Sequence record: MK250017.1
Direction: 5' to 3' (one strand)
DNA: 64,000 bases
A program made the translations under genes and the position numbers. The notes under the pieces are model-generated. The model searched no databases and was not told the origin of the DNA. It saw only the letters and a list, made by a program, of their open reading frames with translations. Positions 1-61,729 of this stretch are shown here, in pieces (position 1 is the stretch's first letter; every line of letters starts with the position of its first letter).

Positions 1-1
1 G

Positions 2-2093: not shown

Positions 2094-2100
2094 TATTAAA

Positions 2101-2190
2101 TTCGTTATTCAAAAAACATTGAATAACGAATTTTTTATTTATGTAATTTAAGTTGCAGGATCTTATATTTAGACGTATATATAAAAAATG
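2101..2190 (+). repeat. Intergenic terminator+regulatory module, copy 1
   Basis: Hairpin ttcgttattc...gaataacgaa, a 33-bp core aataacgaattttttatttatgtaatttaagtt identical to 3076-3108, and ~30 further similar bases. Confidence 0.8.
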
Positions 2191-2198
2191 AATTTTCC

Positions 2199-3047
2199 AT
2201 GGCAAATTATAAACAAGTTTCTAACATTGGTATAGAAACAATTTCAGCAGATACACATACAAATGAAACATTAAAAGCACATTATCAAAGTAATGATTTA
2301 TAGACTATATATTTTGGATTAAAAGATGATAATGGTAATTATGAAGGTAAGTTAATAGAATCTTCTTATGAATTAATATCTACAATACCTGGATGTTCTG
2401 CAACTATTTCTACTATTGATTTAACAAAAACTGCAGGAATTATTAAATATACGATTTCTAAAAATACAACAAGTAGTGCAAGATTAATAACCTTTAAATA
2501 TAAGAATACTGAATTATTTAAAATAAATTAGGTTGATACTAATACATTAATATATAATTCTGAATATGTATATGTATGTACGGTTGGTAATATATCAAGT
2601 GATCCTAATAAAATATGGTTATTTGCTATACTTGCTGAAAATGGTAGTTTACCTAATAAGTCAGATTTATTAAATAATTATAAAACAATGGTGCAATTTG
2701 ATAGTTCATATGCAGGAGATAATCGAAAAAATGGTAGAACATTGTATTTTTCAGAGAAAACGTTACCTGCAAATAAAACAATACAGGAATTAAAAAATAG
2801 TGGGGTATTAACAGTTGTTAGAGAAAATAAAGTTAAGTATGATACAGATATTCCTTATCATTTAGTACTAGTAAATAATAATGCATATAATGCACCATAT
2901 AATATTTAGTCTAACATTGAAGACGCATTTAAAACTCCATATGAGATGTATGTTATAAATTAGAGTGATACTGTTATTTCATATTAGAAGACAATATTTA
3001 ATATATTTGATTATTATTATTGTGGTATATATAAATTTAATTCATAA
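2199..3047 (+). CDS. BACON-like paralog 2 (282 aa, TAG=Gln)
   Basis: ATG 2199 to TAA 3045-3047. GCSATIST...GIIKYTISKNTTSSARLITFKYKNTELFKINQ is closely similar to the 663-2093 protein. Confidence 0.6.
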
Positions 3048-3053
3048 TAATTA

Positions 3054-3140
3054 TTCGTTATTCAATTTGTTTTTAAATAACGAATTTTTTATTTATGTAA
3101 TTTAAGTTACTGGATTTCATATTTAGGCGTAGATATAAAA
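3054..3140 (+). repeat. Intergenic terminator+regulatory module, copy 2
   Basis: Same hairpin and core as 2101-2190. Confidence 0.8.
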
Positions 3141-3156
3141 ATATATTTTAATTTTT

Positions 3157-3990
3157 ATGTCAACATATAAAGAAACAACAGAACGAGAATTTCATATAAT
3201 TAATTTTATAGATAAATCATTAGTTACATTTACGCCTGATCCAAATATAGGTACGAAAGGGCTATTAGTAAAAGGTGTAAGTGTAAAGGATTCAAATAAA
3301 AAAGATGTTTTTATAGGATTAACTGATGGCACAAAGTTTAAATATTTAACTAATGATGATTATAACATCTATTATCAATCTAGTGATGCAATATATGTTA
3401 CTAAATATGCAGGTTCACAAGGTTGGCCTATATACTTGAATGTTTATAAAGAAAATATAGGGTTAATAGCACATATAAAATATTCATATAATGGAGTATA
3501 TGATTAGTTTTTTACTATCAATTACATACCATATGAAGTATTATTTATGGGTATTTATTATTCAGAAGATATAAGAAATGTGTATTTATTTAGTGAAAAA
3601 TTACCATCATCATATAGTGTAAGTCCATCTAAACATATAGCATTATATTCAAGTGCATCTGGTGATATATCATTATATGGTCCATATATATATTATGATC
3701 CCATGAAAATATTAGGTGGTGATGAAAAAAGTATTGATGATTATGTTAATGAAGGTACAATAACATATAAATCTGGAAATGATTTCAATGCTAATATAAA
3801 AAGTATGTATACAATAGAAGTGACATTTGTAAATATACCAAATACAAATAAAGATACAATAGAAATAAGTGAAAAAACAGATATATATTGCTATGAATAT
3901 ATTAATAATAAGTGGCAAACATATGGTTCTAGATCTTTTATATCACCAACACCATTAGTTTATAAGAGTGTTGCACATTATTCGAAATAA
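3157..3990 (+). CDS. Hypothetical protein, probable distant paralog of the two upstream genes (277 aa, one TAG)
   Basis: Track ORFs 3157-3507 and 3547-3990 are in frame across a single TAG. KDVFIGL echoes KEIYFGI and TIYFGL in the upstream genes. Confidence 0.6.
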
Positions 3991-4051
3991 TAAATTAATA
4001 TAAAAAATATTCATGAATAAATAATAAAAAGTTATTTTTAATATATTTTTT

Positions 4052-4462
4052 ATGAAACATAATATTCCATTAAATATACTAGATGAATATGCAAAAACAA
4101 TTTCATCAAAATAGGTAAAAATGCTTTATGAATCAAAATGTAATAAAAAATTTAAGAAAGCATTATATGAAAATATGAAATATCAAAATGATAATAGTTT
4201 TTCAATATACTTAAATGATTTTACATTAGATGAAGCTCATTCATCTGTTGATAAAGCATTAGTACGTTATGTAAGGAAACATAAACTTCAATATAATAAA
4301 GTCAGTGATGGTGTTTATTTTTATACACCTCTTGAAGAAAATTATATTTCCTTATTAGAAAATCTTGTTCAAGACGGATTTGATATAGATTTATTAAAAG
4401 AAAATGTAGATTCACAAAAAGCTACAGTTTATTTAGAAAAATTAAAGTTAAATAAGAAATGA
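4052..4462 (+). CDS. Hypothetical protein (136 aa, one TAG)
   Basis: ATG 4052 is in frame with the track ORF 4121-4462 through one TAG. Confidence 0.6.
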
Positions 4463-5145
4463 TAAAGATTAGAAGACGTAAACCTATTTTTGAGGATGAT
4501 CAGACTACATAGCAGCAACCTGCAACAGGTACAACAGCACAACCTGCTGCAACACCTGCAAATAATACAACAACTCCAGCTGCACCAACTCAACCTCAGC
4601 AACCTGCATAGCAACCTGCTCAACTTAATAATACTAACACACCTCAGCAACCAGCTGATCAAAATAATCAACAGCAATAGCAACAACCTAATCCTAATGC
4701 TTAGAAAGTTGCAGATGTGTTGAAAAAAATGGAAAATACATGGTGGATGATTTCTGTTAATCTTCCTGATGAAATTCAAAAAGATATTCCTGATTTTAAA
4801 CAAGGAAATCAATAGGCTGATAATGCTATTAAAGCATGGGGAACATTTAAACAGAATCCAACAGAAGATACATTCAAACAATTCTTAGAAGGATTTAAAG
4901 CATTTGGTGGCGTAAATAATGATTAGACAAATAATCAATAGAATAGCCAGCAACCAGCTGCACCAGCTCAACCTCAACAACCAGCATAGCAACCTACTCA
5001 ACCTCAAACAAATGTTAATGCTGGATTAAAAGCTGCATATTCATTCAGAAAGAATCTTATGGAAAATCTTGAGATTGCAAATAAGAAAAAATATTATAAT
5101 TCTGTTTGTGAAGATTATTTTGATAAAACTGAATTTACATTATAA
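4459..5145 (+). CDS. Gln/Pro/Ala/Thr-rich low-complexity protein (228 aa, TAG=Gln)
   Basis: MIKIRRRKPIFEDDQTT*QQPATG...QPQQPA*QPAQ...QQQ*QQPNP: TAGs fall inside Gln runs; stop TAA 5143-5145. Confidence 0.75.
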
Positions 5146-5167
5146 TAAAAATAAATGAATCTAAAAT

Positions 5168-5941
5168 ATGGTTAAAAAATATAAATATGTTTATAATCAA
5201 AAAACTGGACATTTTATAAAAAAACTAAATGAAGATGATTCAAATGTAAGTACAGATACACAACAATAGCAAAATAATAATTCTAATACTACTTCATCAA
5301 CAACTGATAATAAAGATACATCAACAAATAATACATCTTTTAAATCTGTTGAATCTGATGAAACAATTCAAAGTCTCAATGCAAAAATGCAAGATAATGA
5401 AAATAAATTTCAATAGGATTTAAATACATAGCAGAAACTTTTAGATGCTGCTAAAGTTACTGCATCTAAAAAAACACCAACAGGACCATATGACCCTGTT
5501 GCAACAGATGCAGACGTATTAAATATCATGAAAAAAATAAATGATATTACTAAACAACATGCTATTGATATTGCAAATTTTCAAGATTAGAAATTAGCAT
5601 AGCTATAGAAACTATCACAAACAAATGAATCATATTATAAAATTCCAGAAAAATATAAATGGTTAAACGAATCTAATATTCATACTGCAAAAATATATAT
5701 GGGTGATCTTATAGCTCCAGATGATTAGCACATATTAAAAGGTATGGCTGATTTCAAACGTGCTTTTAAAGATACAGATTTATTATACGGGAAAGACAGA
5801 AATGGATACTTTCTTATCGCGGTTGATAAAGATGATATGACAAAAGCATTTGACACACTAGAAGAAATAGGATACCTTCGTGATGAAATAATTGATACAA
5901 TGTTACCATAGGTATTAGATAGAACAAAAATGATTTTATAA
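5168..5941 (+). CDS. Hypothetical protein (257 aa, TAG=Gln)
   Basis: ATG 5168 to TAA 5939-5941 with several TAGs; N-terminal FIKKLNEDD. Confidence 0.7.
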
Positions 5942-5944
5942 TTT

Positions 5945-7224
5945 ATGAAAAATGAAATTTTATCATTAATATAGAATAATGATGGAACTATTAATACTCA
6001 TTTTAAAAAAATATTAAAAACACATAAAGATATTTATGATAAGATCTTATTATATTATGATGATTCAACATCTTTAACAGAAGCAGTATATCGTATAATT
6101 AATAATTTAGATGAAAGACCTAAATGTCCTGTATGCGGTAAAAAATTAAAATTTTATGGGTTTTCTACAGGATTTGCAAAATCTTGTTCTATAAGATGTG
6201 CTCAATATAATATAGAAACATAGTAGAAAATAAAAGAAACATGTTTAAAGAGATATGGTGAAACAAATGCAATGAAAAATAAACAAATATATAATAAAGC
6301 AAAGAATACTATAATTAAAAAATATGGAGTTGATAATGTATCTAAATCTGATATAATTAAATAGAAAAAAGTTGAAACATGTTTAAATAATTATGGTGTT
6401 AAATATTTTTATCGAGATGCACTTAGTTTTATCGAGATGCACTTAGGCATTACATTTACCAGATGTTAAAGAAAAAGCAAGTAAAAATTCTCATACTAAA
6501 GAAGTACGTGACAAAGCAAAGAATACTATAATTAAAAAATATGGAGTTGATAATGTATCTAAATCTGATATAATTAAATAGAAAAAAGTTGAAACATGTT
6601 TAAATAATTATGGTGTTAAATATTTTTATCGAGATGCACTTAGTTTTATCGAGATGCACTTAGCCTATGCAATCTAATATTGTATAGAATAAATCTATGT
6701 AGTCATGTTTAAATATATATGGATGTAAATCTATATCATAGGTGTATTCTATAAAATAGAAGAAAATAGAAACAATGCGCTTACATAATTCTTTTTGTAT
6801 ATCTAAACCAGAAAATAAAATATTGAATATTTTATTAAATAAATATAATGATACATGTTATCAATATAGTTCAGATTTATATCCATTTCATTGTGATTTT
6901 TATATACCATCATTAAATTTATATATAGAATATAATGGTAGTTGGACACATGGAAAACATCCATTTAATAAAGATAATGAAGATGATATAGAAATACTTA
7001 ATAATTGGAAAATTAAATCGGAAACAAGTAAATTTTATAAAAGTGCAATAGAAACTTGGACAATACGAGATGTAAATAAACGCAATTTAGCATATAAAAA
7101 TAAATTAAATTTTATTGAAATCTGGTATGTTTATAAAAATTATCATATAATAGGATATTATCAAGGTAAATATATTGATACTGTTATGCCTTAGCTATTT
7201 GATAGACATGAAATGATACAATAA
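5945..7224 (+). pseudogene. Free-standing homing-endonuclease-like gene (Zn finger, KYGV repeats, PD-(D/E)xK domain), frameshifted by two 40-nt inserts
   Basis: CPVC...CSIRC Zn motif, repeats of KYGVDNVSK/YGVKY, and catalytic-like YPFHCDFYIPSLNLYIEYNGSWTHG. The frame is continuous only if 6407-6446 and 6624-6663 are removed. Confidence 0.7.
6296..6663 (+). repeat. 151-bp direct repeat (6296-6446, 6513-6663), each copy ending in 2x TTTTATCGAGATGCACTTAG
   Basis: Direct reading of the sequence. Confidence 0.9.
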
Positions 7225-7231
7225 TTTAATT

Positions 7232-8005
7232 ATGCATTATATACAAGAAACAGATAATTTTAACATAAATCTTCCTTTGTATGGTTCATATTTATTATAT
7301 AATCCAAATACAAAAGAAACTGTAGTTAAAAAATCACCAAATCCTAAATATATTTCTGCTGATACATTTATTGATGTTGCTAATGAACTTAAACAAATTG
7401 CAACGGACTTAAAAATTACACCTACTGAATTACCATTATTTCAATATATTAGATATAGTCGCTATAAAGACGCAACATGGACAATTATTGCAGGTACAAT
7501 AGATAATAATTTTAAAGTGAAAGCAGATGTATCATATTCAATGGTTCCTAATATTCAATAGATGATTTTACCTTCAAAAGAAACTTTAGATTTTCCTCAT
7601 TTTTGTGGAACTATAAACGGTTTAATAAAAGGACATGGTGATCTTTGTGGATGGGCAGGTGATGCAGTCGAATATGCAGCAGATTTAATGAAAGATTAGA
7701 ATGCAGTATTTCCATCAGGTGGGTTTGACAGTGAAGATTTAAGAACTGATTTAGATGCTTATAATTTATATAATATTAGTAATACAAATATTATAGATAA
7801 TATAAAATCATATTATGAAAATATTACAGATAGTAAAAGAATTTCATTATTTTTAAAAGGTGGTGAAAATATTACTACAAGATTTAACAGTTCACCAGAT
7901 ATATTTTATCTTAATATATTAAAACAAAAGATGAATGTAACTGATGAATATATGACATTAGCATTAAATAAAATACAAACATATATGGATAAAAATAAAG
8001 GTTGA
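7232..8005 (+). CDS. Hypothetical protein with DLCGWAGD...GFDSEDLRTDLDAYN motif (257 aa, TAG=Gln)
   Basis: Track ORF 7232-7561 continues through TAG to TGA 8003-8005. Confidence 0.65.
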
Positions 8006-8034
8006 TAATTTTCGATATTATCAACCTTTATTTT

Positions 8035-8682
8035 TTATAAACTTGCAATATATTTCTTTATACCTTCCACATGAATATCTGTAATTATATTTCTACCTTC
8101 ATTACTTAATAACCATGTAGCATCTTCTTTATTATCCATAAACATATTTTCTGTTAAACATGCAGGACATGCAGTTTTTGATAATACATAATAATTTGCT
8201 TCCTGATCAGGATCACCATCTGAATTATCAGGGCGTAATTTCTTACCCAATGGTTTTAATTTAGATTCGGCAACTTCATAGATACATGTTGCTAATTTAT
8301 CTGCAGATGTTTGTCCTTTACTTGTATATACAGACCAACCTTGTGCATTCATCCATGAACCATTTCCAGCGGCATTTACATGAATAGAAATAAAAATTGC
8401 TTTATTTCCCTTTGCTTTTTCTTCAAGATATTTTTTATTAGCACGTTGAACTCGAAGATTTAAATCATAAGATTGACTTGTAATCTCTTCCACTTCAGGA
8501 TGTGTAATATAACATCTATATCCTCCTGAAATTAACTTATTGTAAACTTCATATCCTATTGCACGAACATATGCATATTCTTTTAACTATGTTTTACCAT
8601 CGTCAAATACAGGACTGGATTTCCCTGGTGTATTACAACCATGTCCCATATCAAGCATTACTAAAACTTTACTCTTTTCCAT
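8035..8682 (-). CDS. N-acetylmuramoyl-L-alanine amidase (Amidase_3), endolysin (215 aa, one TAG)
   Basis: VMLDMGHG, QLKEY, FISIHVNAA and CLTENMFMDN supply the His/Glu/His Zn ligands and the catalytic Glu. Start ATG 8682; TAG at codon 32. Confidence 0.88.
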
Positions 8683-18648: not shown

Positions 18649-20238
18649 ATGGCAAATGTTGTTTTGCGACCTTGGGTAAAGGTTGTTGGTGTTATTGCAG
18701 TTGTTGCTGCAATTATGTTTGGTGCTTCTAAATTTTTTGGAGGCAGTAATGATGGTGATAATAAGTCATCGAGTGACAGCGGCGGTTTTTTCAGCAGCAT
18801 GTTTTCTGGTGGTGATGATGATGTAATCACCATTGGTACAAATACTTATGCAGGTTTTCTGCCATTTATGTATTTGAATAATGGTCTTGAACCTAATGAA
18901 GATTGTCCTATTTATAAGGAATATGGTCTTAAGTTGAAGATTGTTGTTCAGGATGATTTTGCTGCAGGACGTGCAGCATTCAATAATGGTGATATTGACA
19001 TTATTTATTGTACTGCTGATGCTCTTCCTGTTGAGATGAGTGAAGGTTCAAATATGAATGATGCTCGTTTCTTTAATGTATCAAACTGGTCACGTGGAGC
19101 TGATGCTATTGTAGTTAATAAGAGTATTCAGAATGTAAGTAACTTGATTGGTAAGGTTGTTTGTTGCTCTCAGGGTACAGCATCTCATACACTGTTGTTG
19201 AATACACTTGAAACAAATGGTATTGGAGCTGATAAGGTAAATATGGGAAATTCTACAGATCCTAATAAGGTTAATATTAAGGTTGTAGATAACGGTCTTG
19301 AAGCTGCTTCTGCATTCCGTGCAGGTTCTTGTGATGCAGCTGTTGTATTCTCTCCAGATGATCAGGATTTGGTTGCAACTGTAAAGGGTGCACATGTATT
19401 GATTTCAACAAAGCAAGCATCTAATATTATTTGTGATGGTTTGATTGCAAAGCAGAGCTACCTTGATTCTAATAAAGAGAATGTAAAGAAACTTATTTCT
19501 GCATTGTTGTATGCAAATGATAAAATGAATAGTGACGAAGCAGCAGTAAAGATTGCAGCTAAGGCTTTTGCAAAGGCATATGGAACAGATGAGAAGTTTG
19601 CAATTGATGGTTCTAAGAATATTCATTATATTACATTGGGAGATGCACAGAACTTCTTTGGTTTGAATAGTTCATATACAGGTATGCAGGGTGATGAGCT
19701 ATATTCAAAAATGGCACGTACTTATGAAAAGTTGGGTCTTTGTAAGAAACCACTTTCATGGCGAAAAGTTTCTTATCCTGATATTATTGAATCACTTGCA
19801 TCTAATGCTGGTGAAGTAAAGGGTGATCAGGCTGCAGAAGCATCAGTAAAGTTTAAAGAAACATCTACATCTGATGCAGAAACAAAGACTGCAATTTCAG
19901 ATAAGAAGGTAACTATTGAATATCCTGTTGATAGTGATATTCTTGATAATAATGCGCAGTGTATTATTGATAGAGAGTTCGCTGGTATTGCAAAGCAGTT
20001 TGCAGGTGCAAAGATTCGTATTGTAGGAAATACTGATAATACTGGTAATTATGCATATAATGTTGAATTGTCACGAAGACGTGCACAATCAGTTGCAAAT
20101 TATCTTGTAAAGGAATATGGATTTGATAAGAATCGATTCATTATTGTTGGTAATGGTCCTAAACGTGCAGTAGAAGATAAAGTAGTAGGAAGTAATAATG
20201 CATATCGTACTACAGATTTTCAGTTGGTAACAGAGTAA
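18649..20238 (+). CDS. ABC substrate-binding protein (NMT1/SsuA-like) fused to a C-terminal OmpA-like peptidoglycan-binding domain
   Basis: N-terminal membrane anchor; periplasmic-binding-protein motifs (IGTNTYAGFLP, SNWSRGADAIV, QGTASHTLL); OmpA motif IVGNTDNTGNYAYNVELSRRRAQSVANYL. Confidence 0.82.
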   Translation: MANVVLRPWVKVVGVIAVVAAIMFGASKFFGGSNDGDNKSSSDSGGFFSSMFSGGDDDVITIGTNTYAGFLPFMYLNNGLEPNEDCPIYKEYGLKLKIVVQDDFAAGRAAFNNGDIDIIYCTADALPVEMSEGSNMNDARFFNVSNWSRGADAIVVNKSIQNVSNLIGKVVCCSQGTASHTLLLNTLETNGIGADKVNMGNSTDPNKVNIKVVDNGLEAASAFRAGSCDAAVVFSPDDQDLVATVKGAHVLISTKQASNIICDGLIAKQSYLDSNKENVKKLISALLYANDKMNSDEAAVKIAAKAFAKAYGTDEKFAIDGSKNIHYITLGDAQNFFGLNSSYTGMQGDELYSKMARTYEKLGLCKKPLSWRKVSYPDIIESLASNAGEVKGDQAAEASVKFKETSTSDAETKTAISDKKVTIEYPVDSDILDNNAQCIIDREFAGIAKQFAGAKIRIVGNTDNTGNYAYNVELSRRRAQSVANYLVKEYGFDKNRFIIVGNGPKRAVEDKVVGSNNAYRTTDFQLVTE

Positions 20239-24237: not shown

Positions 24238-24479
24238 TTGATTTAATGTAGACAATAATAAGATATTAGTATATAATATATAAATTGTTTAATGAAACAA
24301 ATTAATGAATTTAAAATTAAATTNNNNNNNNNNNNNNNNNNNNNNNNNNAATTAATAATAAATAACATATAAATAATATAACAATTAAAAACAAACGCTT
24401 ATTTAATTTTCGTAGCGTTATGGATAAGTTGAATGAAAATTCAGAAATTCCTTTTAGGACGAAGATACTAGTTATGTAT

Positions 24480-24565
24480 GCCAAGATGGTGGAATAGGTA
24501 GACACGCTAGACTTAAAATCTCGTGGACTGAAAAGTCCGTACGGGTTCGAGTCCCGTTCTTGGTA
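24480..24565 (+). tRNA. trnL: tRNA-Leu (anticodon TAA), CCA not encoded
   Basis: Acceptor GCCAAGA/TCTTGGT+A, D-loop GGAATAGGTAGAC, anticodon loop CTTAAAA, long variable arm TGGACTGAAAAGTCCG, T-loop GGTTCGAGTCC; followed by CAA. Confidence 0.93.
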
Positions 24566-24621
24566 CAAAAATTATTATAGAGAATAAACAACATATGTTT
24601 ATTCTCTATTTTTTATATAAT

Positions 24622-38116: not shown

Positions 38117-40705
38117 ATGGGACTTAATATTAATAGCATAGGAGAACAATTTAAAAACGGTTTTATAGATAAATTTAATAAAGATATATCAAATGAGGAT
38201 TTAGATAGAGTTATTTCACAAATGACAACATTAACTAATTCATCTACATACTCATAGCAAAACAGTCCATTATATGGTACATTTAAATATGCAATAGATT
38301 CATCTAAATCATTAGATAGTTTTGAACCTGGTGGCTCAATAAATGATGAAATAACGGAATATCGTGCATGGGATCCAAGACTTGCACGTGTTGATGGGTT
38401 TGTGTCTCGTAGTTCAACAAGTGATGATCATCCTACTGTTGTTCCATTCGCCTCTGAAACAGCAGCTGGCGCATTTTATGATTTAGTATTTACTGCAGAA
38501 AAAGCAGTAGGTGACAAAATGTCAGGATCTACAACGCATAAAGAAAAACCAAAAGAAACTGATAAAAATGGACAACAACAAACATCGTCATCCGAAAAAT
38601 ATTATACTGTTACAGAAGATGGTGAAACAATACCAGATGTTAAGTTATCAACTAAAAACTTTTATATATCAAATACGTCAAACGGAGAAAAAATAAAAAA
38701 TACTATATTAAATGATGGTAATTCATATGGTGTTGCTTCTATTGTTAACCCATATACATTAACTAAATTATGTGGAGGACTTGTAAAAGCAAAATCAAAT
38801 AGTACAGAAAAAAACAGTGATGACATATAGGTAGAAAACCATATGTATGACATACGAAATTCACGTAGATTTTATGGTGATGTAATGGAAAAGGGAGGAG
38901 ATGTTTTAACTGTATCAAATCCTACAACTACTAATATTATTACATGGAGTAATAAAGATAAATGGGGAAGAACACCTTATTATTTTTAGGATTTTGTATT
39001 TTGTAAATATTGGAATGTTATACCTAATAACAGGTTAATTACATTAAGAAAGTATCATGCACCTGTATATGATAACCTTCAATTTTCTAATATGTTTGAT
39101 GGAACAACTGCAACACCATTTGCACCTATTGCTACCGTTATAACTTATTTTGGTGATGATACCGGTAATACATTATCTTCTTTATTCGGATTTACTGCAG
39201 GTACTAAATGGAAAGAAATAACATCTGATGTATATGATGTACAAGGAGAAAGTGGTTCAGATCCTCATGCACTTATTGATGAAATGTTTACTGGAGGTGG
39301 TGGATTTCCTACTGGTGAATCAAATATTATGAGCAGTATTATTGGTAAAACTAATTTATTAACTGGTAAAATGTTTTCATTAGGTAAATTTGTTGGTTTA
39401 TTAAGTCCAGGCGGTTATAATATGGGTAAAGATCAAAAAACATTTGATAAATTATCACAAGCAAATGTAGATCCATCTGAACAACTTTATAGCAACAAAA
39501 TAAAAGGTCCTGTTAATAGAATTAATATGACTAAAGCAAGAGATGCTGGAATTACATTTGATTAGAAATTCAGTTTAACATGTCAATATATAGCCAGACC
39601 TATTGGTGGTGTTAATACAAAAGCAGCAATGCTTGATATTTTATCAAACTGTATGGAAATGGCATCAGCTGATGCAGTATTCTGGGGTGGTGGATATAGA
39701 TTTAATATACACCCACATATGTATCCATTTAAAAACACTGCGTTTAAAAATAGAATTATGGATGATTTATATGCAGGTAGAATATTCGGTAAAGATGGTG
39801 CATTATCTCATACTGTTGAAGGCATAAAAAGTTTTGGAACAGATTCAACTGGTTCATTTTCATGGAGTGAAATAGGTAAACATTTAAGTGAATATCTTGG
39901 TGAAACATTGGGTGCGTTAGGCGAAATGTTCAACACATTACAAAACATGGTATTCGGTACAAATGGTAGTTCTATTGGTGATTGGCTAAAAGGAAAAGGT
40001 AATGATGTTGGTGATGGTGAGTCTGGAGATAAAGGTGCAAAAAAATTAAATTCGCTTGGTTAGAATCTTAATATGATGTGGAGATCTAAAGTTATACAAG
40101 CATCAACAATGCCATCTATAACTGGTATGCGTGCATTATTAACTGGTGAACCTGTCGGTAACTGGCATTTAACAGTTGGAAACCCTTTAAATCCTATTAT
40201 GGTAATAGGTAATCTCATATGTACTGATATGAAAGTTGAAGTAGGAGAAGAATTAGGACCAGATGATTTCCCAACAGAATTAAAAGTAGTTTATACATTA
40301 GAGCATGGTATGCCTCGTGATAAATCTGGAATTCAATCTATGTTTAATAGAGGTAGCGGACGTATATATCAGTTACCCGACTGGATAAGAGCATCATCTG
40401 ATTATGAGTCAAAAGTTGATAATTTTACAGGAGGAAGTAATTTTTATCAGCCAAAATATATGAGTGCATCAAAAATGATGGCAATCGGAGGTGCTCATGG
40501 TTATTAGACATATAAAATAGATAAAGGAAAAAATCCTGCAATGGATGAACATACATCTAATACAGTAATAGCCAAATTTACTCCACCTGACGTAGATGCA
40601 GCTATTAGCAATATTGTTGATAAATCATCTTCATTTTTTGGTTCTAATAATTCATCAAGAGCATGGATTAGAGGTACAGCAGCAACTAGAAAACTTATGA
40701 ATTAA
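38117..40705 (+). CDS. Putative tail/baseplate structural protein (862 aa, TAG=Gln)
   Basis: Four track ORFs in one frame; GNWHLTVGNPLNPIMVIGNLICTDM...GPDDFPTELKVVYTLEHG is a tube/hub-like beta pattern; directly upstream of the gp53-like gene. Confidence 0.6.
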
Positions 40706-46103: not shown

Positions 46104-46147
46104 AATTAAANNNNNNNNNNNNNNNNNNNNNTAATGTATTTTAAAAA

Positions 46148-53473: not shown

Positions 53474-53947
53474 ATGAAGACTAATTTAAATGGTGGTTGT
53501 TTATTACCAAATGAAGAGATTATTGTAAAAGATGGACTTGTATTGATGTCTGAAATTAAAGTAGGTGATAAAGTTTTATCACATGATGGTGATTACCATG
53601 AAGTAGAGCATGTATGGAATTTTGAGAAACCTACATACTATGTATCACTTTCAAACGGTGATCATATCGAATGTTCAAATACACATAGATTTTTGGTAAA
53701 TAAGAATAAGATTGAGAAGGAATCATCATGGAAAACTGCTGAAGAACTTCATGATGGAGATGAAATCTTTACAATGAGTACCATTAATATGGACATTAAT
53801 GAGAAAATTAAGTTTAATAAAATAAAGATTGTCCGTATATTCAAATCAGGAATTAATAATCCTGTGATTGACATTACTGTCAAAGATACACATACATATA
53901 TTTCAGCTAATGGTATTGTTAATCATAATTCAGGAACTAATTTCTGA
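53474..53947 (+). CDS. Stand-alone mini-intein (Hint domain) with very short exteins
   Basis: MKTNLNGG|CLLPNEEI (block A), IECSNTHRF (block B), VIDITVKDTHTYISANGIVNHN|SGTNF (blocks F/G, His-Asn then Ser+1). Confidence 0.85.
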   Translation: MKTNLNGGCLLPNEEIIVKDGLVLMSEIKVGDKVLSHDGDYHEVEHVWNFEKPTYYVSLSNGDHIECSNTHRFLVNKNKIEKESSWKTAEELHDGDEIFTMSTINMDINEKIKFNKIKIVRIFKSGINNPVIDITVKDTHTYISANGIVNHNSGTNF

Positions 53948-54462: not shown

Positions 54463-55716
54463 ATGGATACAAAAACATATATGGCAATTAAAGATTGTCT
54501 TAGAATAATTATTCAAGGATCTGAATTTGAAAACAATTTATTTGCAGTCGGTGGATGTTGTAGAGATGAGATTTTAGGAAATAATATAAAAGATTTAGAC
54601 CTTGTTGTTTCATTGGAAAACGGCGGTATTAAATTTGCAGAATGGTTGGAAAAGAATCATTTTACAAAAGGAACTGTTGTGACATATCCTCGATATGGAA
54701 CTGCTATGTTCAGACTAAAGGATTTTCCTAATGAAGAACTTGAAGTTGTACAAACAAGAACTGAAATTTATACAACAGATTCAAGAAAACCAGATACAAC
54801 ATTCGGTTCACTTAAGCAGGATTGCATGCGTAGAGACCTTACAATCAATGCAATTTATTATGATATTTCAAACAGTAAATTTATTGATGTTACAAACAGA
54901 TCATTTGATGACATTAAAAATAAAATTATTGTAACACCATGTGAACCAGATCAGACATATATTGATGATCCTCTTCGCATTATGAGATGTGTAAGATTTG
55001 CATGTAAACTTGGTTGGAATATAGATAAAAATGTATTCAACAGTATGAAGAAAAATATAGATAGACTATCTATTATTTCAAAAGAAAGAATACAGGATGA
55101 ACTTATGAAAATATTGAATACACCAAATTCAAAATTAGGTATTGATTATCTATTTGATATTGATGCAATGAAATTTATTTTCCCTTGTATAAATCATAAT
55201 ATTCCTGGACATTTTATTGATTTAGATAAGACATATAAACCTTATTTAAAATTAGCATTAATTAATATTAATAATTCTAATGTTAAAGAAGATTTAATTA
55301 ATCTTAAATTTTCTACATATGAAATTAATACAATAATGAATTATATTAATGTATATCATGATATGTCGAAAATTAATAATCAATCATCACCCAGTGATAT
55401 TAGACGAATGTTATATAAATGTAAAACATTAAATATATTCTTTGATGTATATAACATGATAGTAATATATGAATCAAATAACAATAAATTAAAATCAATT
55501 CATGATGCTATTTCGAAAGGAATAAATTGTAATGATTTAATTAAGATGTTTGAATATAAGTTACCAGTTAATGGTAATGATATTATGGATGTATTTAATA
55601 TTAAACCCGGACCAAAAATTAAAGAATATCTTGATAAAAGTTTGGATATTGTCTTTGATAATCCTTATATAACAAAAGATGAAATTTTAAATAAGTTAAA
55701 AGAGATTAAAAATTAA
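54463..55716 (+). CDS. cca: tRNA nucleotidyltransferase (CCA-adding enzyme / poly(A) polymerase family)
   Basis: AVGGCCRDEILG...KDLDLVV, DCMRRDLTINAIYYD, DDPLRIMRCVRF, SKERIQDEL; no HD domain evident. Confidence 0.9.
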   Translation: MDTKTYMAIKDCLRIIIQGSEFENNLFAVGGCCRDEILGNNIKDLDLVVSLENGGIKFAEWLEKNHFTKGTVVTYPRYGTAMFRLKDFPNEELEVVQTRTEIYTTDSRKPDTTFGSLKQDCMRRDLTINAIYYDISNSKFIDVTNRSFDDIKNKIIVTPCEPDQTYIDDPLRIMRCVRFACKLGWNIDKNVFNSMKKNIDRLSIISKERIQDELMKILNTPNSKLGIDYLFDIDAMKFIFPCINHNIPGHFIDLDKTYKPYLKLALININNSNVKEDLINLKFSTYEINTIMNYINVYHDMSKINNQSSPSDIRRMLYKCKTLNIFFDVYNMIVIYESNNNKLKSIHDAISKGINCNDLIKMFEYKLPVNGNDIMDVFNIKPGPKIKEYLDKSLDIVFDNPYITKDEILNKLKEIKN

Positions 55717-56908: not shown

Positions 56909-57223
56909 ATGATTATAACATATACAGCATTTGATGGAAAGGTATTTAATGATCAAAAGGAATGTGAAGACTATGAATATAAATTAAAACTTTTAGGAGT
57001 TGCATATTCAGAATTCAGTAAATTTCTTGATAAAATTCCAGAAGATTATAATGATAATCTTTGGATATGTAAAGAAAAATTAGAAATTAATGATGCATGT
57101 GGACAAGAACTTCCTACAATTGGAGATACTATAAAGGTTTTAACAAAAGATGATTTATCACATATGAGAGTAATTAAGACTCTGCTTAAAAATTTTAAAT
57201 TGGATGATAATGGAAACAACTAG
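56909..57223 (+). CDS. Hypothetical protein
   Basis: Likely start ATG 56909: MIITYTAFDGKVFNDQKECEDYE. Confidence 0.6.
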   Translation: MIITYTAFDGKVFNDQKECEDYEYKLKLLGVAYSEFSKFLDKIPEDYNDNLWICKEKLEINDACGQELPTIGDTIKVLTKDDLSHMRVIKTLLKNFKLDDNGNN

Positions 57224-57758
57224 AAATGTTATAGATAAAATTAAATATCTATATAAAAGGTTATATAAAGCCGAATTATTTTCTTCATCGTTAGCAGTTC
57301 GTATGAATGAGCGTGATGACTTTTATGAATATTCTAGACAACATCAACCAGCGTTTAAGATAGCTATGATGGAATTACTTAGTCATCCAGATGAAATGAA
57401 TGCTCGTATTCCTTTTTACTGTTGTTATATATTACGTGAAAATGATTTTCTTAAATTATATGAAAATAAAAAGGATAAATTACCTTTAAATGAAGATTAT
57501 GAATGGGATGAATGTAATTTATGGTTAAATCATTTTAAATCAACAAAAAATATAGATTACTACAAAGATTACAAAGAATATAAAAGATATTTAAATCTGA
57601 ATTTTAAACCATTTAATCCATTTACTGGTAAAGATCCAAATCCTACATATGAAGAATATATCAGAAAAAGAGATTCTATCGATTCAATAAATAAATTTGT
57701 AACTAAATTAATAAAAGATAATAATATAAAGATAACATGGAAGTACGAGACGAAGTAA
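57204..57758 (+). CDS. Hypothetical protein
   Basis: 184-aa ORF overlapping its neighbours. Confidence 0.6.
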   Translation: MIMETTRNVIDKIKYLYKRLYKAELFSSSLAVRMNERDDFYEYSRQHQPAFKIAMMELLSHPDEMNARIPFYCCYILRENDFLKLYENKKDKLPLNEDYEWDECNLWLNHFKSTKNIDYYKDYKEYKRYLNLNFKPFNPFTGKDPNPTYEEYIRKRDSIDSINKFVTKLIKDNNIKITWKYETK

Positions 57759-58078
57759 AAAAGCGTATGGAAGAATCGTTAAAAGGATGTAAGATTATAG
57801 ATAAACAAGACACACCTAAAACTACAATACTTCCAGATCTTTCAGATCCTGCTGAATATAAAAGATGGTTTAATATGGGTCCAAAAGAAGCAATGGTAAA
57901 TCTACAAAAATATGTTGATTTAAACAAGAAAGATAATATTAACTTTGAAACGGAGTTTAACTATCTTTATACGAATGGTGGAATTTGTGGATGGAATAAA
58001 ATACCATATACAACATTTTATAATATTATATATGGTAAACAGCGTGTTGATTTTAATGGTAATTTAACAAATAATTAA
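57737..58078 (+). CDS. Hypothetical protein
   Basis: 113-aa ORF. Confidence 0.55.
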   Translation: MEVRDEVKKRMEESLKGCKIIDKQDTPKTTILPDLSDPAEYKRWFNMGPKEAMVNLQKYVDLNKKDNINFETEFNYLYTNGGICGWNKIPYTTFYNIIYGKQRVDFNGNLTNN

Positions 58079-58081
58079 AAC

Positions 58082-58228
58082 ATGAATGTAGAACGAGCAT
58101 TATTAAAATTAAATAAATTAAAATCTGAAATGGAATTAGAATGCTTTTATAACACCAATGTTGAATATAAAGCAAAACCATGGTTAGAATTGGTGGAAGA
58201 TACTATAGCATTTTTAGATGGTAAATAA
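58082..58228 (+). CDS. Small hypothetical protein (48 aa)
   Basis: MNVERALLKLNKLK...LDGK, tightly packed between neighbours. Confidence 0.45.
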   Translation: MNVERALLKLNKLKSEMELECFYNTNVEYKAKPWLELVEDTIAFLDGK

Positions 58229-58243
58229 AATTTATATAAAGTT

Positions 58244-58597
58244 ATGTCATATAATTTAATACCAAAATATTATACATTATATCCTGAGTGTTCAAGTTCA
58301 ACTTATTTATATTTTCATGATGAACCTTATGCTTATTGGTTAGAGAATAGTGAATATAAAGTTTATGAATGGGTTTTGTTTAAAGAATACAATGATTATA
58401 AATCTGTATGTCATCCAAATGATTGTATATCTGCAATAAGTTATAATGATCTCATTGATTCATTTAAAACATATTCATTTTATGAGAATATGGATCGTGA
58501 AAAGATGTGTAGAACATTTAGGCAAAGATCATTAGAAACAGAATTTGGACCTGAATCTGAACCTTATTGGGATTTTGAAGATTTTATTGAAGAATAA
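58244..58597 (+). CDS. Hypothetical protein
   Basis: 117-aa ORF. Confidence 0.55.
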   Translation: MSYNLIPKYYTLYPECSSSTYLYFHDEPYAYWLENSEYKVYEWVLFKEYNDYKSVCHPNDCISAISYNDLIDSFKTYSFYENMDREKMCRTFRQRSLETEFGPESEPYWDFEDFIEE

Positions 58598-58616
58598 TAT
58601 ATTTTTATATATGAAA

Positions 58617-58646
58617 ATGGGAGATGAAACTTATTTCATCTCCCAT
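58617..58646. terminator. Perfect 13-bp hairpin with a 4-nt loop between convergent genes
   Basis: atgggagatgaaa-ctta-tttcatctcccat. Confidence 0.7.
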
Positions 58647-58667
58647 ATATTTTTATTAATAGTTTTA

Positions 58668-59567
58668 TTAATATTCTAAAGTTAAGAAACCTAAGACACA
58701 GCCGTCGTAGTCCTTATCGTAGCTGCCGATGCCACCATTATTGAGACCGACAAAGTACTCATAGCTACTTGATTTCTCTCTACTACTCCAATAATAGCCG
58801 TCATAGAAACCTCTACCAACCAATGCAGTTCTCTTTTCATTTATAGCTGTTTTATTCGCATAAATCTGATATAATTCACCAGGAGTTGGTAAATACCAGT
58901 CACCTGATTTTGTACCTGGTGTTGAATATGCAACGCAGCAACATGCTGGAGCACAGTAACCAATACCAGAATTATTTGTTATACCATTACATATATATGG
59001 ATCTTGTTTTGTTGCTTTAGATAAACATTGTTGTGTATTCCATTTACCACCTATATATGCTGTTGAATTCGTACCACCTTTTACATTACCTACTGTAGTA
59101 CCATAATTACCAAACGTTATATTATATGGAGAAACTTGTCCCTCTGCTGGATATGCTGGATGCATATAATTTATAGAAACGAATCTAGCTGTTTTTACAG
59201 CACCCGTTGAATCATCACCATTTTTGAAGTTTTCTGAAACTTCAGGGATTACACAAATTGCAATAGGTGTATTATCTACATTGTTTGTTTGTGCGTCAAG
59301 TGTAAGTTTACCATCTGAAGTAGAATAAAGAACATCTGCAACTGCAGGAATTTTCTTTATTGATGATGAATCCAATTTAACTGGTGCCATATTTACTGAA
59401 CCTAACATAACACAATTGGCATCTGGATGTCTCTGACAATAAATAGACGCATCCTCTATTCCTTTTGTCGGTTTCACATCGAATACATATGCACCATCTC
59501 CATGATTAATTAATGAAACTGATAAATCTAACTCAGATTTACTATCAAATACGTTAAAATATTTCAT
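58668..59567 (-). CDS. C-type-lectin-fold (DUF1566/Lcl-like) protein, candidate DGR target
   Basis: DWYLPTPGELYQIY...YYWSSRE...YFVGLNNGGIGSYDKDYDGCVLGF at the C-terminus; NNC-codon-rich 3' end. Confidence 0.7.
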   Translation of the reverse strand: MKYFNVFDSKSELDLSVSLINHGDGAYVFDVKPTKGIEDASIYCQRHPDANCVMLGSVNMAPVKLDSSSIKKIPAVADVLYSTSDGKLTLDAQTNNVDNTPIAICVIPEVSENFKNGDDSTGAVKTARFVSINYMHPAYPAEGQVSPYNITFGNYGTTVGNVKGGTNSTAYIGGKWNTQQCLSKATKQDPYICNGITNNSGIGYCAPACCCVAYSTPGTKSGDWYLPTPGELYQIYANKTAINEKRTALVGRGFYDGYYWSSREKSSSYEYFVGLNNGGIGSYDKDYDGCVLGFLTLEY

Positions 59568-59800
59568 AATATATTTTAAAATTATAATATTTATATAGTC
59601 AATAAATAATTTTCATGAAATCATATATATTAATAAACATAGCTAAATAGATATTTAATAATTAATTATATTTTCATAAAACTTAAATAATTCTATCAAA
59701 TTTCTATCAATTTAACTTTATTTTTATTAAAATTTCATATAAATTTTAATAAATTTTTTCAACCAGTATATAGTATCTGTGATTAATTATTTTATACTAA

Positions 59801-61729
59801 TTATGAATTATTTATAATTTTTTCTACTTCTGCTCTTTTCTTTGCAGATACAATCCAACCCGGTGTTTTAACACCATTTATATTTAAGAATTTATTATAT
59901 CGACAACCAATTTCTTTTAACTTATCTTTAATAGGAAGAATATCTTTATAATCACCATATATAGCAATAGCTCTATCTGAATAATCATAAATCTTTACAT
60001 TACTATTATTTGTTACTTCAGTTCCCTTATTATTTTCAGAATTAACTTCTGTATTATTTGTTGTAGTAATATCTGATTTACGTGGTCTTCCTCTACGTTT
60101 CTTTACCTGTTGAATTTCATCATTATTTGTTTCATCTGATGTATGTTTAACAACATTATTTTCTTTTGCTTTATTTCTTAATTCTTTCCTTAATTGTTTA
60201 GCTTCTTCTTTTCGTTGTTCAACAATTTTAGCTCTACGTTCTTCAACAGGTTTAACAATTACATCGCGTAAAGTTTCTGTACCACCTTTTTCAAGTTTAA
60301 ATGATGTATGATCTAACCATTTACAGAATGCTTCATATGTCTTATATGTATTTGTAACTGACATACGTTTCGCAAGAATATATGAAATAAATCTATCACC
60401 TAATGATTTTATACGTATTACCCAGTTATTACCAAAATATGTTGTGTCAGGTTTTAAATATTTGATACAGTTTTCTTTCATTAATTCTGCATCTTCTTTC
60501 TTATCTTCTGTACGTTTATTTACAGAATCAATTTTTGCTTTTTCTTTTGCTTCTTGTGCTTCTTTATTATCTGGTTCTACATATTCTCTATGTGGTCCAT
60601 CCTTTGAACTATAGCAATCAAGGAACCAATCTTTCGATGTCAATATTGTTTTCCATTGTGGTTTTGTTGGTTTCCATCGTCTACAATTAGCCTCAAATTT
60701 ATAAGGACCTAACTGGATCATAATTCCATAATTTTTACCAGGGAATCCACATGCTTCAAAATTAAATTTAGGTAAATTTCCCATAGTAATACCTTCAAAT
60801 GACATATAAGGCAAAACTCTCCATGGTAATTGTCTAACTCTTGCTGTCAATTCTGAACAGTTAGAAGGGAAACCAACAAAATTTATTTTAACTTTCCCGT
60901 CTAATGGTTGATATGGTTGATTAACAGTTCTTTCATCATTAAATTCTAATTGAGCTCTATATGTTCCATTAGGTAAACCTGTAAGATTTCCTGTTTTTGG
61001 TAATCCTTTATATGAATAAACATCATTTCTGAATGATGTATTTATTTTCTTAATAAATGAATAATCATTCATATTATAACATTCCATTAAACTTATTGAA
61101 TCAGTTGATTCAATGTTAATAGTTTCATTATCAATCCAACATCTTAATAAATTAATATCAACATCACCTTTATAATAATAGTTATGTTCATCAAATACAG
61201 TAGAATATAATTTTTCTTCTTTAATAACATCACCATTAACATAAAAGTTTTTTGGATAAACACCCTTTAAACCGACACTAATAAAATTGATATTTTTTAA
61301 GTCTATTATATTATTAATTGCATCTGAATCTTTTGCGTTTACATATCTTCCAACTTCTAGATTATATCTAAGCAATACATTACTGATACTGAATTCATTA
61401 AGTTCATCAATAAATTTCTGTGCATCATTTAAACGTCTAAAAGATACATGTGTTAAATAAACTTTTGGTTCTTCTGGTTTTTTTGTTTCATAATAGAAAG
61501 CTACTGTAGACCCTTCTACTTCTGAATGAACTTTTTTATCTACTGCATTTTTAATATCAATATAGCTATTACTGAATGTTTGCTCTGTTAAATACGATTC
61601 ACAATATGTTAACATATTTTTCGTTATCTTACCAGCAAGATCAGATGATAAATCATCTTGGTTATCTACAATATCCTCAAAATCATCATCAAATAAACTT
61701 TCAATCAAACGTTTTACACATTTATTCAT
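59801..61729 (-). CDS. Multidomain hypothetical protein with an AT-hook and a small C-terminal domain (642 aa)
   Basis: KKRRGRPRKS AT-hook; C-terminal YSDRAIAIYGD...IKDKLKEIGCRYN...GWIV. Confidence 0.7.
   Translation of the reverse strand: MNKCVKRLIESLFDDDFEDIVDNQDDLSSDLAGKITKNMLTYCESYLTEQTFSNSYIDIKNAVDKKVHSEVEGSTVAFYYETKKPEEPKVYLTHVSFRRLNDAQKFIDELNEFSISNVLLRYNLEVGRYVNAKDSDAINNIIDLKNINFISVGLKGVYPKNFYVNGDVIKEEKLYSTVFDEHNYYYKGDVDINLLRCWIDNETINIESTDSISLMECYNMNDYSFIKKINTSFRNDVYSYKGLPKTGNLTGLPNGTYRAQLEFNDERTVNQPYQPLDGKVKINFVGFPSNCSELTARVRQLPWRVLPYMSFEGITMGNLPKFNFEACGFPGKNYGIMIQLGPYKFEANCRRWKPTKPQWKTILTSKDWFLDCYSSKDGPHREYVEPDNKEAQEAKEKAKIDSVNKRTEDKKEDAELMKENCIKYLKPDTTYFGNNWVIRIKSLGDRFISYILAKRMSVTNTYKTYEAFCKWLDHTSFKLEKGGTETLRDVIVKPVEERRAKIVEQRKEEAKQLRKELRNKAKENNVVKHTSDETNNDEIQQVKKRRGRPRKSDITTTNNTEVNSENNKGTEVTNNSNVKIYDYSDRAIAIYGDYKDILPIKDKLKEIGCRYNKFLNINGVKTPGWIVSAKKRAEVEKIINNS

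What the first reader, a model, noticed from the sequence alone, without database searches (positions are those of the whole stretch)
58668..58812. Orphan DGR-like variable region at the 3' end of a C-type-lectin-fold gene
Seen: 18 of the 41 codons in 58686-58808 end in C (GAC, GGC, AGC, TAC, GTC, ATC) although this genome mostly uses A/T-ending codons. They encode YWSS-x-E...V-x-L-x-x-G...K...V, and a perfect 13-bp hairpin lies about 20 nt past the stop. Established: diversity-generating retroelements mutate adenines in AAC-rich template repeats, producing NNC codons in CLec-fold C-termini, and the BPP-1 DGR needs a hairpin downstream of its VR. I found no template repeat or reverse transcriptase in the window. 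Inference: a remote DGR elsewhere in the genome diversifies this probable receptor-binding or adhesin protein.
Basis: partly seen in the sequence, partly recalled or inferred. Interest (0 to 1): 0.7.

Follow-up and report, generated by a model that had tools for sequence, protein, structure and literature searches.

The report
Orphan DGR variable region in Lak-A1
The C-rich codons mark a real variable region written by a diversity-generating retroelement, but this megaphage (Prevotella phage Lak-A1) has neither the reverse transcriptase nor the template, which sit in a sister megaphage, so the region is a frozen relic here.

Summary
In 58686-58808, 18 of 41 codons end in C, against 3.8% across the window. 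A 13-bp hairpin lies 21 nt past the stop.

The window is Prevotella phage Lak-A1 (MK250017.1, a complete circular genome). The gene (58668-59567, minus strand, 299 aa) has a C-type-lectin-like C-terminus of the Lcl_C/DUF1566 class.

A sister megaphage, IMG/VR record G002 (553,716 bp), carries a canonical DGR: an Avd-sized ORF, an AAC-rich template repeat, and an RT with IGNLTSQ and YVDD motifs. It has six targets, five of them more than 100 kb from the RT.

The window's VR differs from that template at 26 of 138 positions, and 23 of those are template adenines (p = 6e-7). It is therefore a genuine DGR-written VR.

Lak-A1 itself has no RT and no TR anywhere. Where G002 holds the 5.8-kb cassette, Lak-A1 holds about 650 bp of unrelated sequence.

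The VR does not vary among Lak-A1-like strains in many metagenomes, although other parts of the gene do. In DGR-positive relatives, VRs differ between samples only at adenines.

Verdict: an orphan, frozen VR. It was left by cassette loss or brought in by recombination. Ongoing diversification by a remote DGR in this genome is not supported.

The parts
58668..59567 (-). Target-type gene (299 aa, P0001). Residues 1-55 form a poorly predicted N-terminal part. Residues about 64-299 form a C-type-lectin-like (Lcl_C/DUF1566-class) body that is rich in cysteines.
   Evidence: ORF and translation. Pfam Lcl_C at E = 2e-4, below the curated cut-off. Weak NCBIfam hits to the C-termini of adhesin Lcl and FimD tip adhesin. 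AF2 model at pLDDT 90.7. VIA-align: 4eps Z 15.2, Lcl C-domain 8q4e Z 11.8, then many C-type lectin-like domains including Mtd (Z 6.0), TvpA (5.2) and TaqVP (5.1).
58679..58816 (-). Variable region. These 138 nt are collinear, without gaps, with the template repeat of the DGR in sister megaphage G002.
   Evidence: 26 mismatches, 23 of them at TR adenines (A>G 16, A>T 7), binomial p = 5.8e-7.
58700..58805 (-). The stretch that holds all A-to-N substitutions. TR codons AAC and AAT appear here as GGC, AGC, TAC, GAC, TAT, TTT, GGT, GAT and TGT. This is the source of the C-ending codons and of the local GC rise.
   Evidence: Position-by-position comparison with the TR. 18 of 41 codons end in C.
58679..58699 (-). 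Constant 3' end of the VR, in the IMH position. It is shared by the TR and by all VRs of the family. TR/VR homology stops right after it. It is AT-rich, unlike the GC-rich IMH of BPP-1.
   Evidence: Alignment of the TR with the VRs. The one difference from the TR (58682) is private to Lak-A1; other strains carry the TR base.
58617..58646 (.). Perfect 13-bp hairpin with a 4-nt loop and T-runs on both strands. It is a bidirectional intrinsic terminator between the convergent genes 58244-58597 (+) and 58668-59567 (-). A role as a DGR target-recognition cruciform is neither shown nor excluded.
   Evidence: Terminator scan on both strands and fold at z = -5.4. The stem is kept, with a different loop, in G001 (no DGR signature), in G002 and in other strains.

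Best explanation
The stretch is a genuine but orphaned DGR variable region. A G002-type retroelement (Avd-sized ORF, AAC-rich TR, RT) once copied its template into the 3' end of this lectin-fold gene through an error-prone cDNA. That turned AAC/AAT template codons into NNC/NNT codons, which explains the C-ending codons in a 25% GC genome.

The Lak-A1 genome that contains the window lacks the retroelement. Either its lineage lost the 5.8-kb cassette that sits beside the prohead protease gene in G002, or the diversified allele was brought into a DGR-less backbone by homologous recombination between co-infecting Lak phages. Since then the VR has been frozen and evolves like ordinary coding sequence under purifying selection.

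The protein is most likely a ligand-binding (adhesin or receptor-binding type) protein whose binding face is the former variable surface. The downstream hairpin acts as a shared terminator.

Shown here: the VR-TR relation, the absence of RT and TR, the empty cassette site, and population invariance. Inferred: loss versus import, and the binding function.
For: Identity of the window:
- It is 100% identical to Lak-A1 MK250017.1, a circular complete genome of 541,724 bp.

The DGR in G002:
- The TR lies at L015:4881-5018, and the RT (P0002) carries IGNLTSQ and YVDD (RVT_1; phrog_1423 at E = 2e-64).
- A conserved 131-aa ORF predicted as four helices lies upstream, and a target gene lies adjacent.
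- The genome holds one TR and six VRs.

The A-specific signature:
- Window VR: 23 of 26 mismatches at TR adenines.
- G002's own VRs: 16/16, 17/19, 24/25, 19/21 and 22/26.

Absence of the retroelement from Lak-A1:
- MK250016.1 and MK250017.1 have no RVT_1 match at E <= 10. The same search finds the RT in G002, which serves as a positive control.
- MK250016.1 has no P0002 homolog.
- tblastn of the RT against all GenBank phages hits none of the 15 Lak genomes.
- The TR query finds only two VR-like places per Lak-A1 genome, at most 81% identical.
- At the cassette site, G002 has 5.8 kb, Lak-A1 and G001 about 650 bp of unrelated filler, Lak-A2 about 64 bp and Lak-C1 about 12 bp.

The VR is frozen:
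- Contigs that differ by 0.8-1.3% in the flanks have 0 and 2 (synonymous) differences in the gene.
- Twelve distinct protein variants of the 90% cluster, many from contigs of about 530-542 kb, share every diversified VR residue while varying by up to 7% elsewhere. One of them is truncated by a frameshift within the VR.
- Contigs from wastewater, manure and gut runs carry the same VR with 1-2 differences.

Contrast with DGR-positive relatives:
- Contigs from different samples with identical RT and TR have different adjacent VRs, with 21/21, 23/24, 22/24 and 20/20 mismatches at adenines.
Against: - Only assembled contigs were available for the public runs, so low-frequency A-site variants in Lak-A1 populations could not be looked for.
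- One strain difference (58703) falls on a TR-adenine position.
- In run X15 the assembly forks inside the VR. One branch has 20 differences whose positions were not listed. It may be the paralog, but a variant VR is not excluded.
- The direction of the event (cassette loss, cassette gain in G002, or allele import) is not resolved.
- Orthologous VRs of the DGR-less genomes A1, A2 and C1 differ from each other mainly at TR-adenine sites (18/26, 27/40, 23/36). Diversification therefore continued after these lineages separated, which a single ancient loss does not explain.
Confidence: 0.8

Rival explanations
1. One reading: an active DGR elsewhere in the same genome keeps diversifying this VR.
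For: The VR carries a clean A-to-N signature and keeps the constant 3' end and a downstream hairpin. In the sister genome G002, remote targets more than 100 kb from the RT do exist.
Against: The complete circular Lak-A1 genomes have no RT at E <= 10 and no TR. The syntenic cassette site is empty. The VR does not vary across strains and samples.
Confidence: 0.03
2. Diversification in trans at the population level. DGR-positive Lak relatives that co-infect the same Prevotella cell supply the RT, Avd and TR-RNA. These occasionally rewrite the VRs of DGR-less genomes such as Lak-A1, which keep the cis elements.
For: Orthologous VRs of three DGR-less complete genomes differ mainly at TR-adenine sites. 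DGR-positive (G002) and DGR-negative (G001, G003) Lak genomes come from the same metagenome, by their IMG/VR record names. The window's VR 3' end and hairpin are nearly the same as those of G002's syntenic target.
Against: No variation of the VR is seen in any Lak-A1-like strain, although the gene varies elsewhere. VRs of DGR-less genomes carry more non-adenine mismatches than those of G002, as expected if they are no longer reset from a TR. Recombination of already diversified alleles explains the same pattern without action in trans.
Confidence: 0.12
3. No DGR is involved: the GC-rich patch is a horizontally acquired fragment or a local codon-bias oddity.
For: The local GC (about 0.44) is well above the genome's 0.25.
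Against: The patch aligns without gaps to an AAC-rich TR that sits next to an RT in a sister phage, and the differences fall on adenines. The C-ending codons are exactly the TR's AAC codons. The flanks of the gene are ordinary Lak sequence.
Confidence: 0.01

Closest known systems
Legionella pneumophila DGR and its target LdtA (CLec2 VR class; DUF1566/DUF823/Fib_succ_major category of Wu et al. 2018, PMC5758913)
   Same: The VR lies at the extreme C-terminus of a DUF1566/Lcl_C-type C-type-lectin-like domain and has the YWSS...E motif. The template has AAC codons and mutagenesis is adenine-specific. A hairpin follows the VR.
   Different: Here the genome that holds the VR has no RT or TR. The host is a 541-kb lytic megaphage with TAG read as Gln, not a bacterial chromosome or ICE. 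The constant 3' end is AT-rich.
Bordetella phage BPP-1 DGR (mtd-avd-TR-brt)
   Same: In sister phage G002 the order is an Avd-sized ORF, then the TR, then an RT with the (I/L)GxxxSQ motif, with a target gene adjacent. The target has a C-type-lectin fold (Mtd Z 6.0).
   Different: BPP-1 has one adjacent target. G002 has six, five of them 137-221 kb from the RT. The RT has a C-terminal extension of about 300 aa (676 aa in all). Lak-A1 has only the VR.
Treponema denticola DGR (TvpA) and other cellular DGRs with multiple remote targets
   Same: One TR serves several paralogous C-type-lectin-fold targets scattered over hundreds of kb.
   Different: Wu et al. 2018 (PMC5758913) expected remote targets (>100 kb) not to occur in phage-associated DGRs. 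In G002 they lie inside a phage genome, which its size makes possible.
Lak megaphages (Devoto et al. 2019, PMC6784885; Crisci et al. 2021, PMC8346664)
   Same: The window is Lak-A1 itself: about 25% GC, TAG recoded, Prevotella host.
   Different: Neither paper mentions a reverse transcriptase, a DGR or a retroelement. None of the 15 GenBank Lak genomes has the RT.

Membership tests
Diversity-generating retroelement (complete system in this genome) | A DGR-clade reverse transcriptase encoded in the same genome | tested here: not met
   No RVT_1 match at E <= 10 in MK250016.1 or MK250017.1. No homolog of the G002 RT. The same search finds the RT in G002.
Diversity-generating retroelement (complete system in this genome) | A template repeat in the same genome that differs from the VR almost only at adenines | tested here: not met
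   No repeat of the VR in the window. The G002 TR query finds only two VR-like places per Lak-A1 genome, at most 81% identical.
DGR variable region (target side) | The VR lies at the 3' end of the target gene and its differences from a TR are concentrated on template adenines | tested here: met
   Against the TR of sister phage G002, 23 of 26 mismatches fall on A, with no gaps (p = 5.8e-7).
DGR variable region (target side) | C-type-lectin-fold scaffold (CLec2 / DUF1566 class) | tested here: met
   Pfam Lcl_C is weak (E = 2e-4, below cut-off). The AF2 model has pLDDT 90.7. VIA-align gives the Lcl C-domain Z 11.8 and a long run of C-type lectin-like domains including Mtd, TvpA and TaqVP.
DGR variable region (target side) | An IMH at the VR 3' end, distinct from IMH* of the TR, and a downstream inverted repeat | tested here: inconclusive
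   A 21-nt constant end is shared with the TR, and homology stops right after it. It is not GC-rich. The 13-bp hairpin lies 32 nt downstream and has the form of a bidirectional terminator.
DGR variable region (target side) | Ongoing diversification (VR polymorphism at adenine-derived positions within or between populations) | tested here: not met
   The VR is identical in strains that differ by 0.8-1.3% in the flanks, in 12 protein variants of the cluster and in contigs of three environmental runs. Variation at read level was not testable because only contigs were served.
DGR in sister phage G002 | Avd accessory protein (a four-helix bundle of about 130 aa, upstream of the TR) | tested here: inconclusive
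   A 131-aa ORF is conserved in every RT contig. A single-sequence AF2 model shows four helices but only pLDDT 61.7. No Pfam, NCBIfam or PHROG hit.
DGR in sister phage G002 | Activity: identical TR and RT, with VRs that differ between samples only at adenines | tested here: met
   Eight RT-bearing contigs from different samples hold the TR: six carry it identical to G002's, two carry one substitution. Five of them also hold the adjacent VR, in four distinct versions, with 21/21, 23/24, 22/24 and 20/20 mismatches at A.

The most novel reading that the evidence does not exclude
The DGR cassette is an accessory, population-level 'diversification service' in Lak megaphages. Genomes without it, such as Lak-A1, keep competent VRs that are rewritten in trans during co-infection with DGR-positive relatives, or they continually import freshly diversified alleles by recombination. 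Receptor-binding diversity would then be shared across a phage population that mostly does not pay for the retroelement.
Probability: 0.15. Interest if true: 0.8.

Novelty: new variant of a known kind. Interest (0 to 1): 0.55.

Why it matters
DGRs are the only known natural system of targeted protein hypermutation in prokaryotes and their viruses. Three points matter here.

First, Lak-type megaphages, among the largest known phages of the gut, include members with a working DGR. The Lak papers I could search do not mention one.

Second, in that member one template serves six lectin-fold genes spread over 550 kb. A large survey (PMC5758913) expected remote targets not to occur in phage-borne DGRs.

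Third, the reference genomes Lak-A1, A2 and C1 carry VRs with the adenine signature but no retroelement. The cassette is therefore a presence/absence polymorphism, and diversified alleles outlive or travel without it.

These frozen VRs mark the likely ligand-binding proteins of uncultured megaphages whose host-recognition proteins are unknown. For annotation, a VR-like codon signature should not be taken as proof that the same genome holds an active DGR.

Tried and rejected
- TR in the window: blastn-short of the VR against the window found only the VR itself and the hairpin's self-match.
The ENA 541,756-bp contig that is 100% identical to the window could not be searched as a whole. I used the GenBank Lak-A1 records instead.
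- Exact 42-nt VR pattern in IMG/VR: no hit.
- The other GC-rich islands in the window (about 4460-4580, 19260-19300, 38320-38380) are ordinary coding sequence, not VRs.
- Read-level pile-up: all 24 runs offered are kept as Logan contigs, so A-specific minor variants could not be examined.
- Avd: no family hit for the 131-aa ORF, and the single-sequence model has low confidence.
- DGR-positive contigs on a Lak-A1-like backbone: the flanks of RT-bearing contigs are 98-99% identical to G002 but only 93-96% identical to the DGR-less genomes, so none was found.
- Horizontal acquisition from a GC-richer source: rejected because of the TR match.
- Complex prediction was not used, because no claim here rests on proteins binding each other.

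Full report
**What is at the coordinates.** The finding lies on the minus strand, at the 3' end of an ORF at 58668-59567 (299 aa, P0001). The window has about 25% GC. In 58686-58808, 18 of 41 codons end in C, against 13 of 253 in the rest of the gene (Fisher p = 5.7e-10). Among 16,151 codons of long ORFs in the window, 3.8% end in C. This is the highest 41-codon window in the whole 64 kb; the next best has 9. A perfect 13-bp hairpin (58617-58646, 4-nt loop, -20.3 kcal/mol, z = -5.4) starts 21 nt after the stop. No repeat of the stretch lies in the window.

**Whose genome it is.** Window 1-24000 and 57000-61000 are 100% identical to Prevotella phage Lak-A1, MK250017.1. This is a complete circular genome of 541,724 bp from human faeces. 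The window corresponds to about 294061-358060 of that record. An ENA contig of 541,756 bp is also 100% identical over 15.3 kb. Reading TAG through nearly triples the long-ORF content of the window (17 kb to 48 kb), as expected for Lak phages, which recode TAG (PMC6784885, PMC8346664).

**The cognate retroelement exists, in a sister phage.** Relatives of P0001 in IMG/VR led to a record rated 100% complete, G002 (IMGVR_UViG_3300045988_166570, 553,716 bp), with several paralogs. G002 has an RVT_1 match. The region (L015) reads as follows:
- A 131-aa ORF (4241-4636).
- A non-coding AAC-rich repeat (4881-5018).
- A 676-aa RT (5071-7101, four in-frame TAG) with IGNLTSQ and YVDD. The Q of the SQ motif is itself a TAG codon.
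- A P0001 paralog on the opposite strand (7209-8120).
- The prohead protease gene (PF03420).

The 131-aa ORF is present in every RT contig examined that reaches far enough upstream and is predicted as four helices. The model has low confidence and no family matched, so calling it Avd remains inconclusive. The TR query finds one TR and six VRs in G002, at about 6.9, 8.1, 133.6, 218.0, 357.2 (adjacent) and 529.1 kb. Five of the targets lie 137-221 kb from the RT on the circle.

**The window's VR was written from that template.** Window 58679-58816 aligns without gaps to the 138-nt TR. Of 26 mismatches, 23 are at TR adenines (16 A>G, 7 A>T), where 41% would be expected by chance (p = 5.8e-7). The TR codons AAC and AAT appear in the window as GGC, AGC, TAC, GAC, TAT, TTT, GGT, GAT and TGT. 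This accounts for both the C-ending codons and the GC rise.

G002's own VRs score 16/16, 17/19, 24/25, 19/21 and 22/26 at adenines. The syntenic ortholog in G001, the nearest held record, has 9/18, an insertion and AT-rich codons, so it shows no signature. Of the three non-adenine differences in the window, one (58682) is private to Lak-A1, because other strains carry the TR base.

**The fold.** Pfam gives a weak Lcl_C (DUF1566) hit. NCBIfam gives weak hits to the C-termini of Lcl and of a FimD tip adhesin. A phmmer search of 1.8 billion representatives finds 991 proteins, mostly matching residues about 146-298, often at their C-termini.

The AF2 model built on 61 sequences has pLDDT 90.7. Foldseek ranks the Legionella Lcl C-domain (8q4e) and a Bacteroides fimbrial protein (4eps) first. 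VIA-align gives 4eps Z 15.2, 8q4e Z 11.8 and Bd2740-C Z 8.8. A long series of C-type lectin-like domains follows, including the DGR targets Mtd (Z 6.0), TvpA (5.2) and TaqVP (5.1). This places the VR in the CLec2/DUF1566 category of Wu et al. (PMC5758913).

**Lak-A1 has no retroelement.**
- An RVT_1 search of the whole of MK250016.1 and MK250017.1 finds nothing at E <= 10. The same search finds the RT in G002 despite its TAG codons.
- The G002 RT protein finds nothing in MK250016.1.
- tblastn of the RT against all 50,697 GenBank phage records hits none of the 15 Lak genomes: A1 (four records), A2, B1-B9 and C1.
- The TR finds only two places per Lak-A1 genome, this VR (81%) and a second paralog's decayed VR (69%; 22/35 at A, with a 12-nt insertion). 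Nothing TR-like turns up.
- Lak-A2 has one VR-like place and Lak-C1 four (20/26; 19/24, 25/33, 20/30, 24/36 at A). Lak-B1 has none. None of the three has an RT.
- At the syntenic site beside the prohead protease, G002 holds 5.8 kb. Lak-A1 and G001 hold about 650 bp of unrelated filler, Lak-A2 about 64 bp and Lak-C1 about 12 bp.

**The VR is frozen in Lak-A1 but live in DGR-positive relatives.**
- The exact 299-aa protein occurs on at least 10 contigs, eight of them 0.2-1 Mb.
- Two contigs whose flanks differ from the window by 0.8% and 1.3% have 0 and 2 (synonymous) differences in the gene and none in the VR. The intergenic hairpin loop does differ.
- Thirteen sequences of the 90% cluster were aligned, several from contigs of 530-542 kb. 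They share every diversified residue of the VR but differ by up to 7% elsewhere, mainly in residues 182-202. One is truncated by a frameshift inside the VR.
- Logan contigs of a wastewater, a manure and a gut run carry the same VR with one or two differences: 58764, synonymous, at a TR cytosine; 58703, at a TR adenine; and 58682.
- By contrast, eight RT-bearing contigs from different samples hold the TR: six carry it identical to G002's and two carry one substitution. Five of them also hold the adjacent VR, in four distinct versions, with 21/21, 23/24, 22/24 and 20/20 mismatches at adenines.

The retroelement therefore works in nature, and the Lak-A1 VR is not being rewritten.

**The hairpin.** It lies between two convergent genes, has T-runs on both strands and is called as a terminator in both directions. 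Its stem is kept in G001, whose VR has no DGR signature, and in G002's syntenic target. The loop varies among strains. Two other G002 targets have a different hairpin that overlaps their stop codon. Wu et al. note that inverted repeats follow only a minority of VRs and that some are terminators. A role in target recognition is possible but not shown.

**How it most likely came about.** Shown: the VR was templated by a G002-type TR; Lak-A1 lacks the RT and TR; the cassette site is empty; and the VR is static. Inferred: either the Lak-A1 lineage lost the cassette, or the diversified allele entered a DGR-less backbone by recombination.

Two observations favour a recombining population over one ancient loss:
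- Orthologous VRs of the DGR-less genomes A1, A2 and C1 differ from one another mainly at TR-adenine sites (18/26, 27/40, 23/36).
- Lak-A1 and G001 share the same filler at the cassette site, yet one has a clean VR and the other none.

DGR-positive and DGR-negative genomes occur in the same metagenome, by their IMG/VR record names. Rewriting in trans during co-infection remains possible, and I give it about 0.12-0.15. RT-bearing contigs have flanks 98-99% identical to G002 and only 93-96% identical to the DGR-less genomes, so I found no DGR-positive Lak-A1 backbone.

**Limits.**
- No raw reads were served, so rare variants could not be seen.
- In run X15 the assembly forks at the VR's 3' end into two contigs of equal depth. 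This probably reflects the two paralogs, but the positions of one branch's 20 differences were not listed.
- The function of the protein is inferred from fold and family only. Its neighbours give no structural-module context.

**Novelty.** The two main Lak papers do not contain the words reverse transcriptase, DGR or retroelement. The full-text searches found no paper linking Lak phages to DGRs. Remote targets inside a phage genome go against the expectation stated in PMC5758913. The window's own feature is an orphan VR. I rate it a new variant of a known kind, of moderate interest.

Noticed in passing
window 58962-59024 (residues 182-202 of P0001): Among Lak-A1-like strains the gene's real polymorphic patch is here. 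Two haplotypes differ at about 12 of 21 residues, while the former VR does not vary. It looks like mosaic exchange with paralogs, not DGR action.
   Followed up: partly
window 4460-4720 (+ strand), and window-wide: In-frame TAG codons sit inside a Gln/Pro-rich ORF. Reading TAG through raises the summed length of ORFs over 600 nt from 17 kb to 48 kb. This fits the known TAG recoding of Lak phages. The target gene itself has no TAG.
   Followed up: partly
L015:5071-7101 (G002, outside the window): The invariant Gln of the DGR RT motif IGNLTSQ is encoded by TAG. This is a clean internal proof that TAG is read as Gln in this phage. The RT also has a C-terminal extension of about 300 aa with no family match.
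   Followed up: partly
G002 about 352.4-358.2 kb (L015:2428-8206), versus MK250016.1 about 189.7-190.4 kb (L039:1532-2201): The site beside the prohead protease gene is an indel hot spot with four states: a 5.8-kb DGR cassette that also holds a 471-aa coiled-coil ORF with 8 TAG codons; about 650 bp of filler; about 64 bp; and about 12 bp.
   Followed up: partly
window 1-6295: Only MK250017.1 is collinear with the first 6.3 kb of the window. The other three Lak-A1 assemblies align from 6296 onward, in three pieces, so there is a structural difference among Lak-A1 genomes here.
   Followed up: no
window 58630-58662: Some strains (L007, run X1) have a loop insertion of 7-8 nt and several substitutions around the terminator hairpin, while the stem is kept.
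   Followed up: partly
window 24480-24566; 24324-24349 and 46111-46131: The first place holds a tRNA-Leu (anticodon TAA). The other two are short runs of N (masked), which I left untouched.
   Followed up: no
window 53474-53947 (+) and 54463-55716 (+): In the gene table of the identical ENA contig, the neighbours include a 157-aa product with an intein-splicing domain hit and a CCA-adding/poly(A) polymerase family enzyme. Neither is related to the finding.
   Followed up: no
MK250016.1 529274-529435 (outside the window): Lak-A1 has a second paralog with a more decayed VR: 22 of 35 mismatches at TR adenines, plus a 12-nt insertion.
   Followed up: partly
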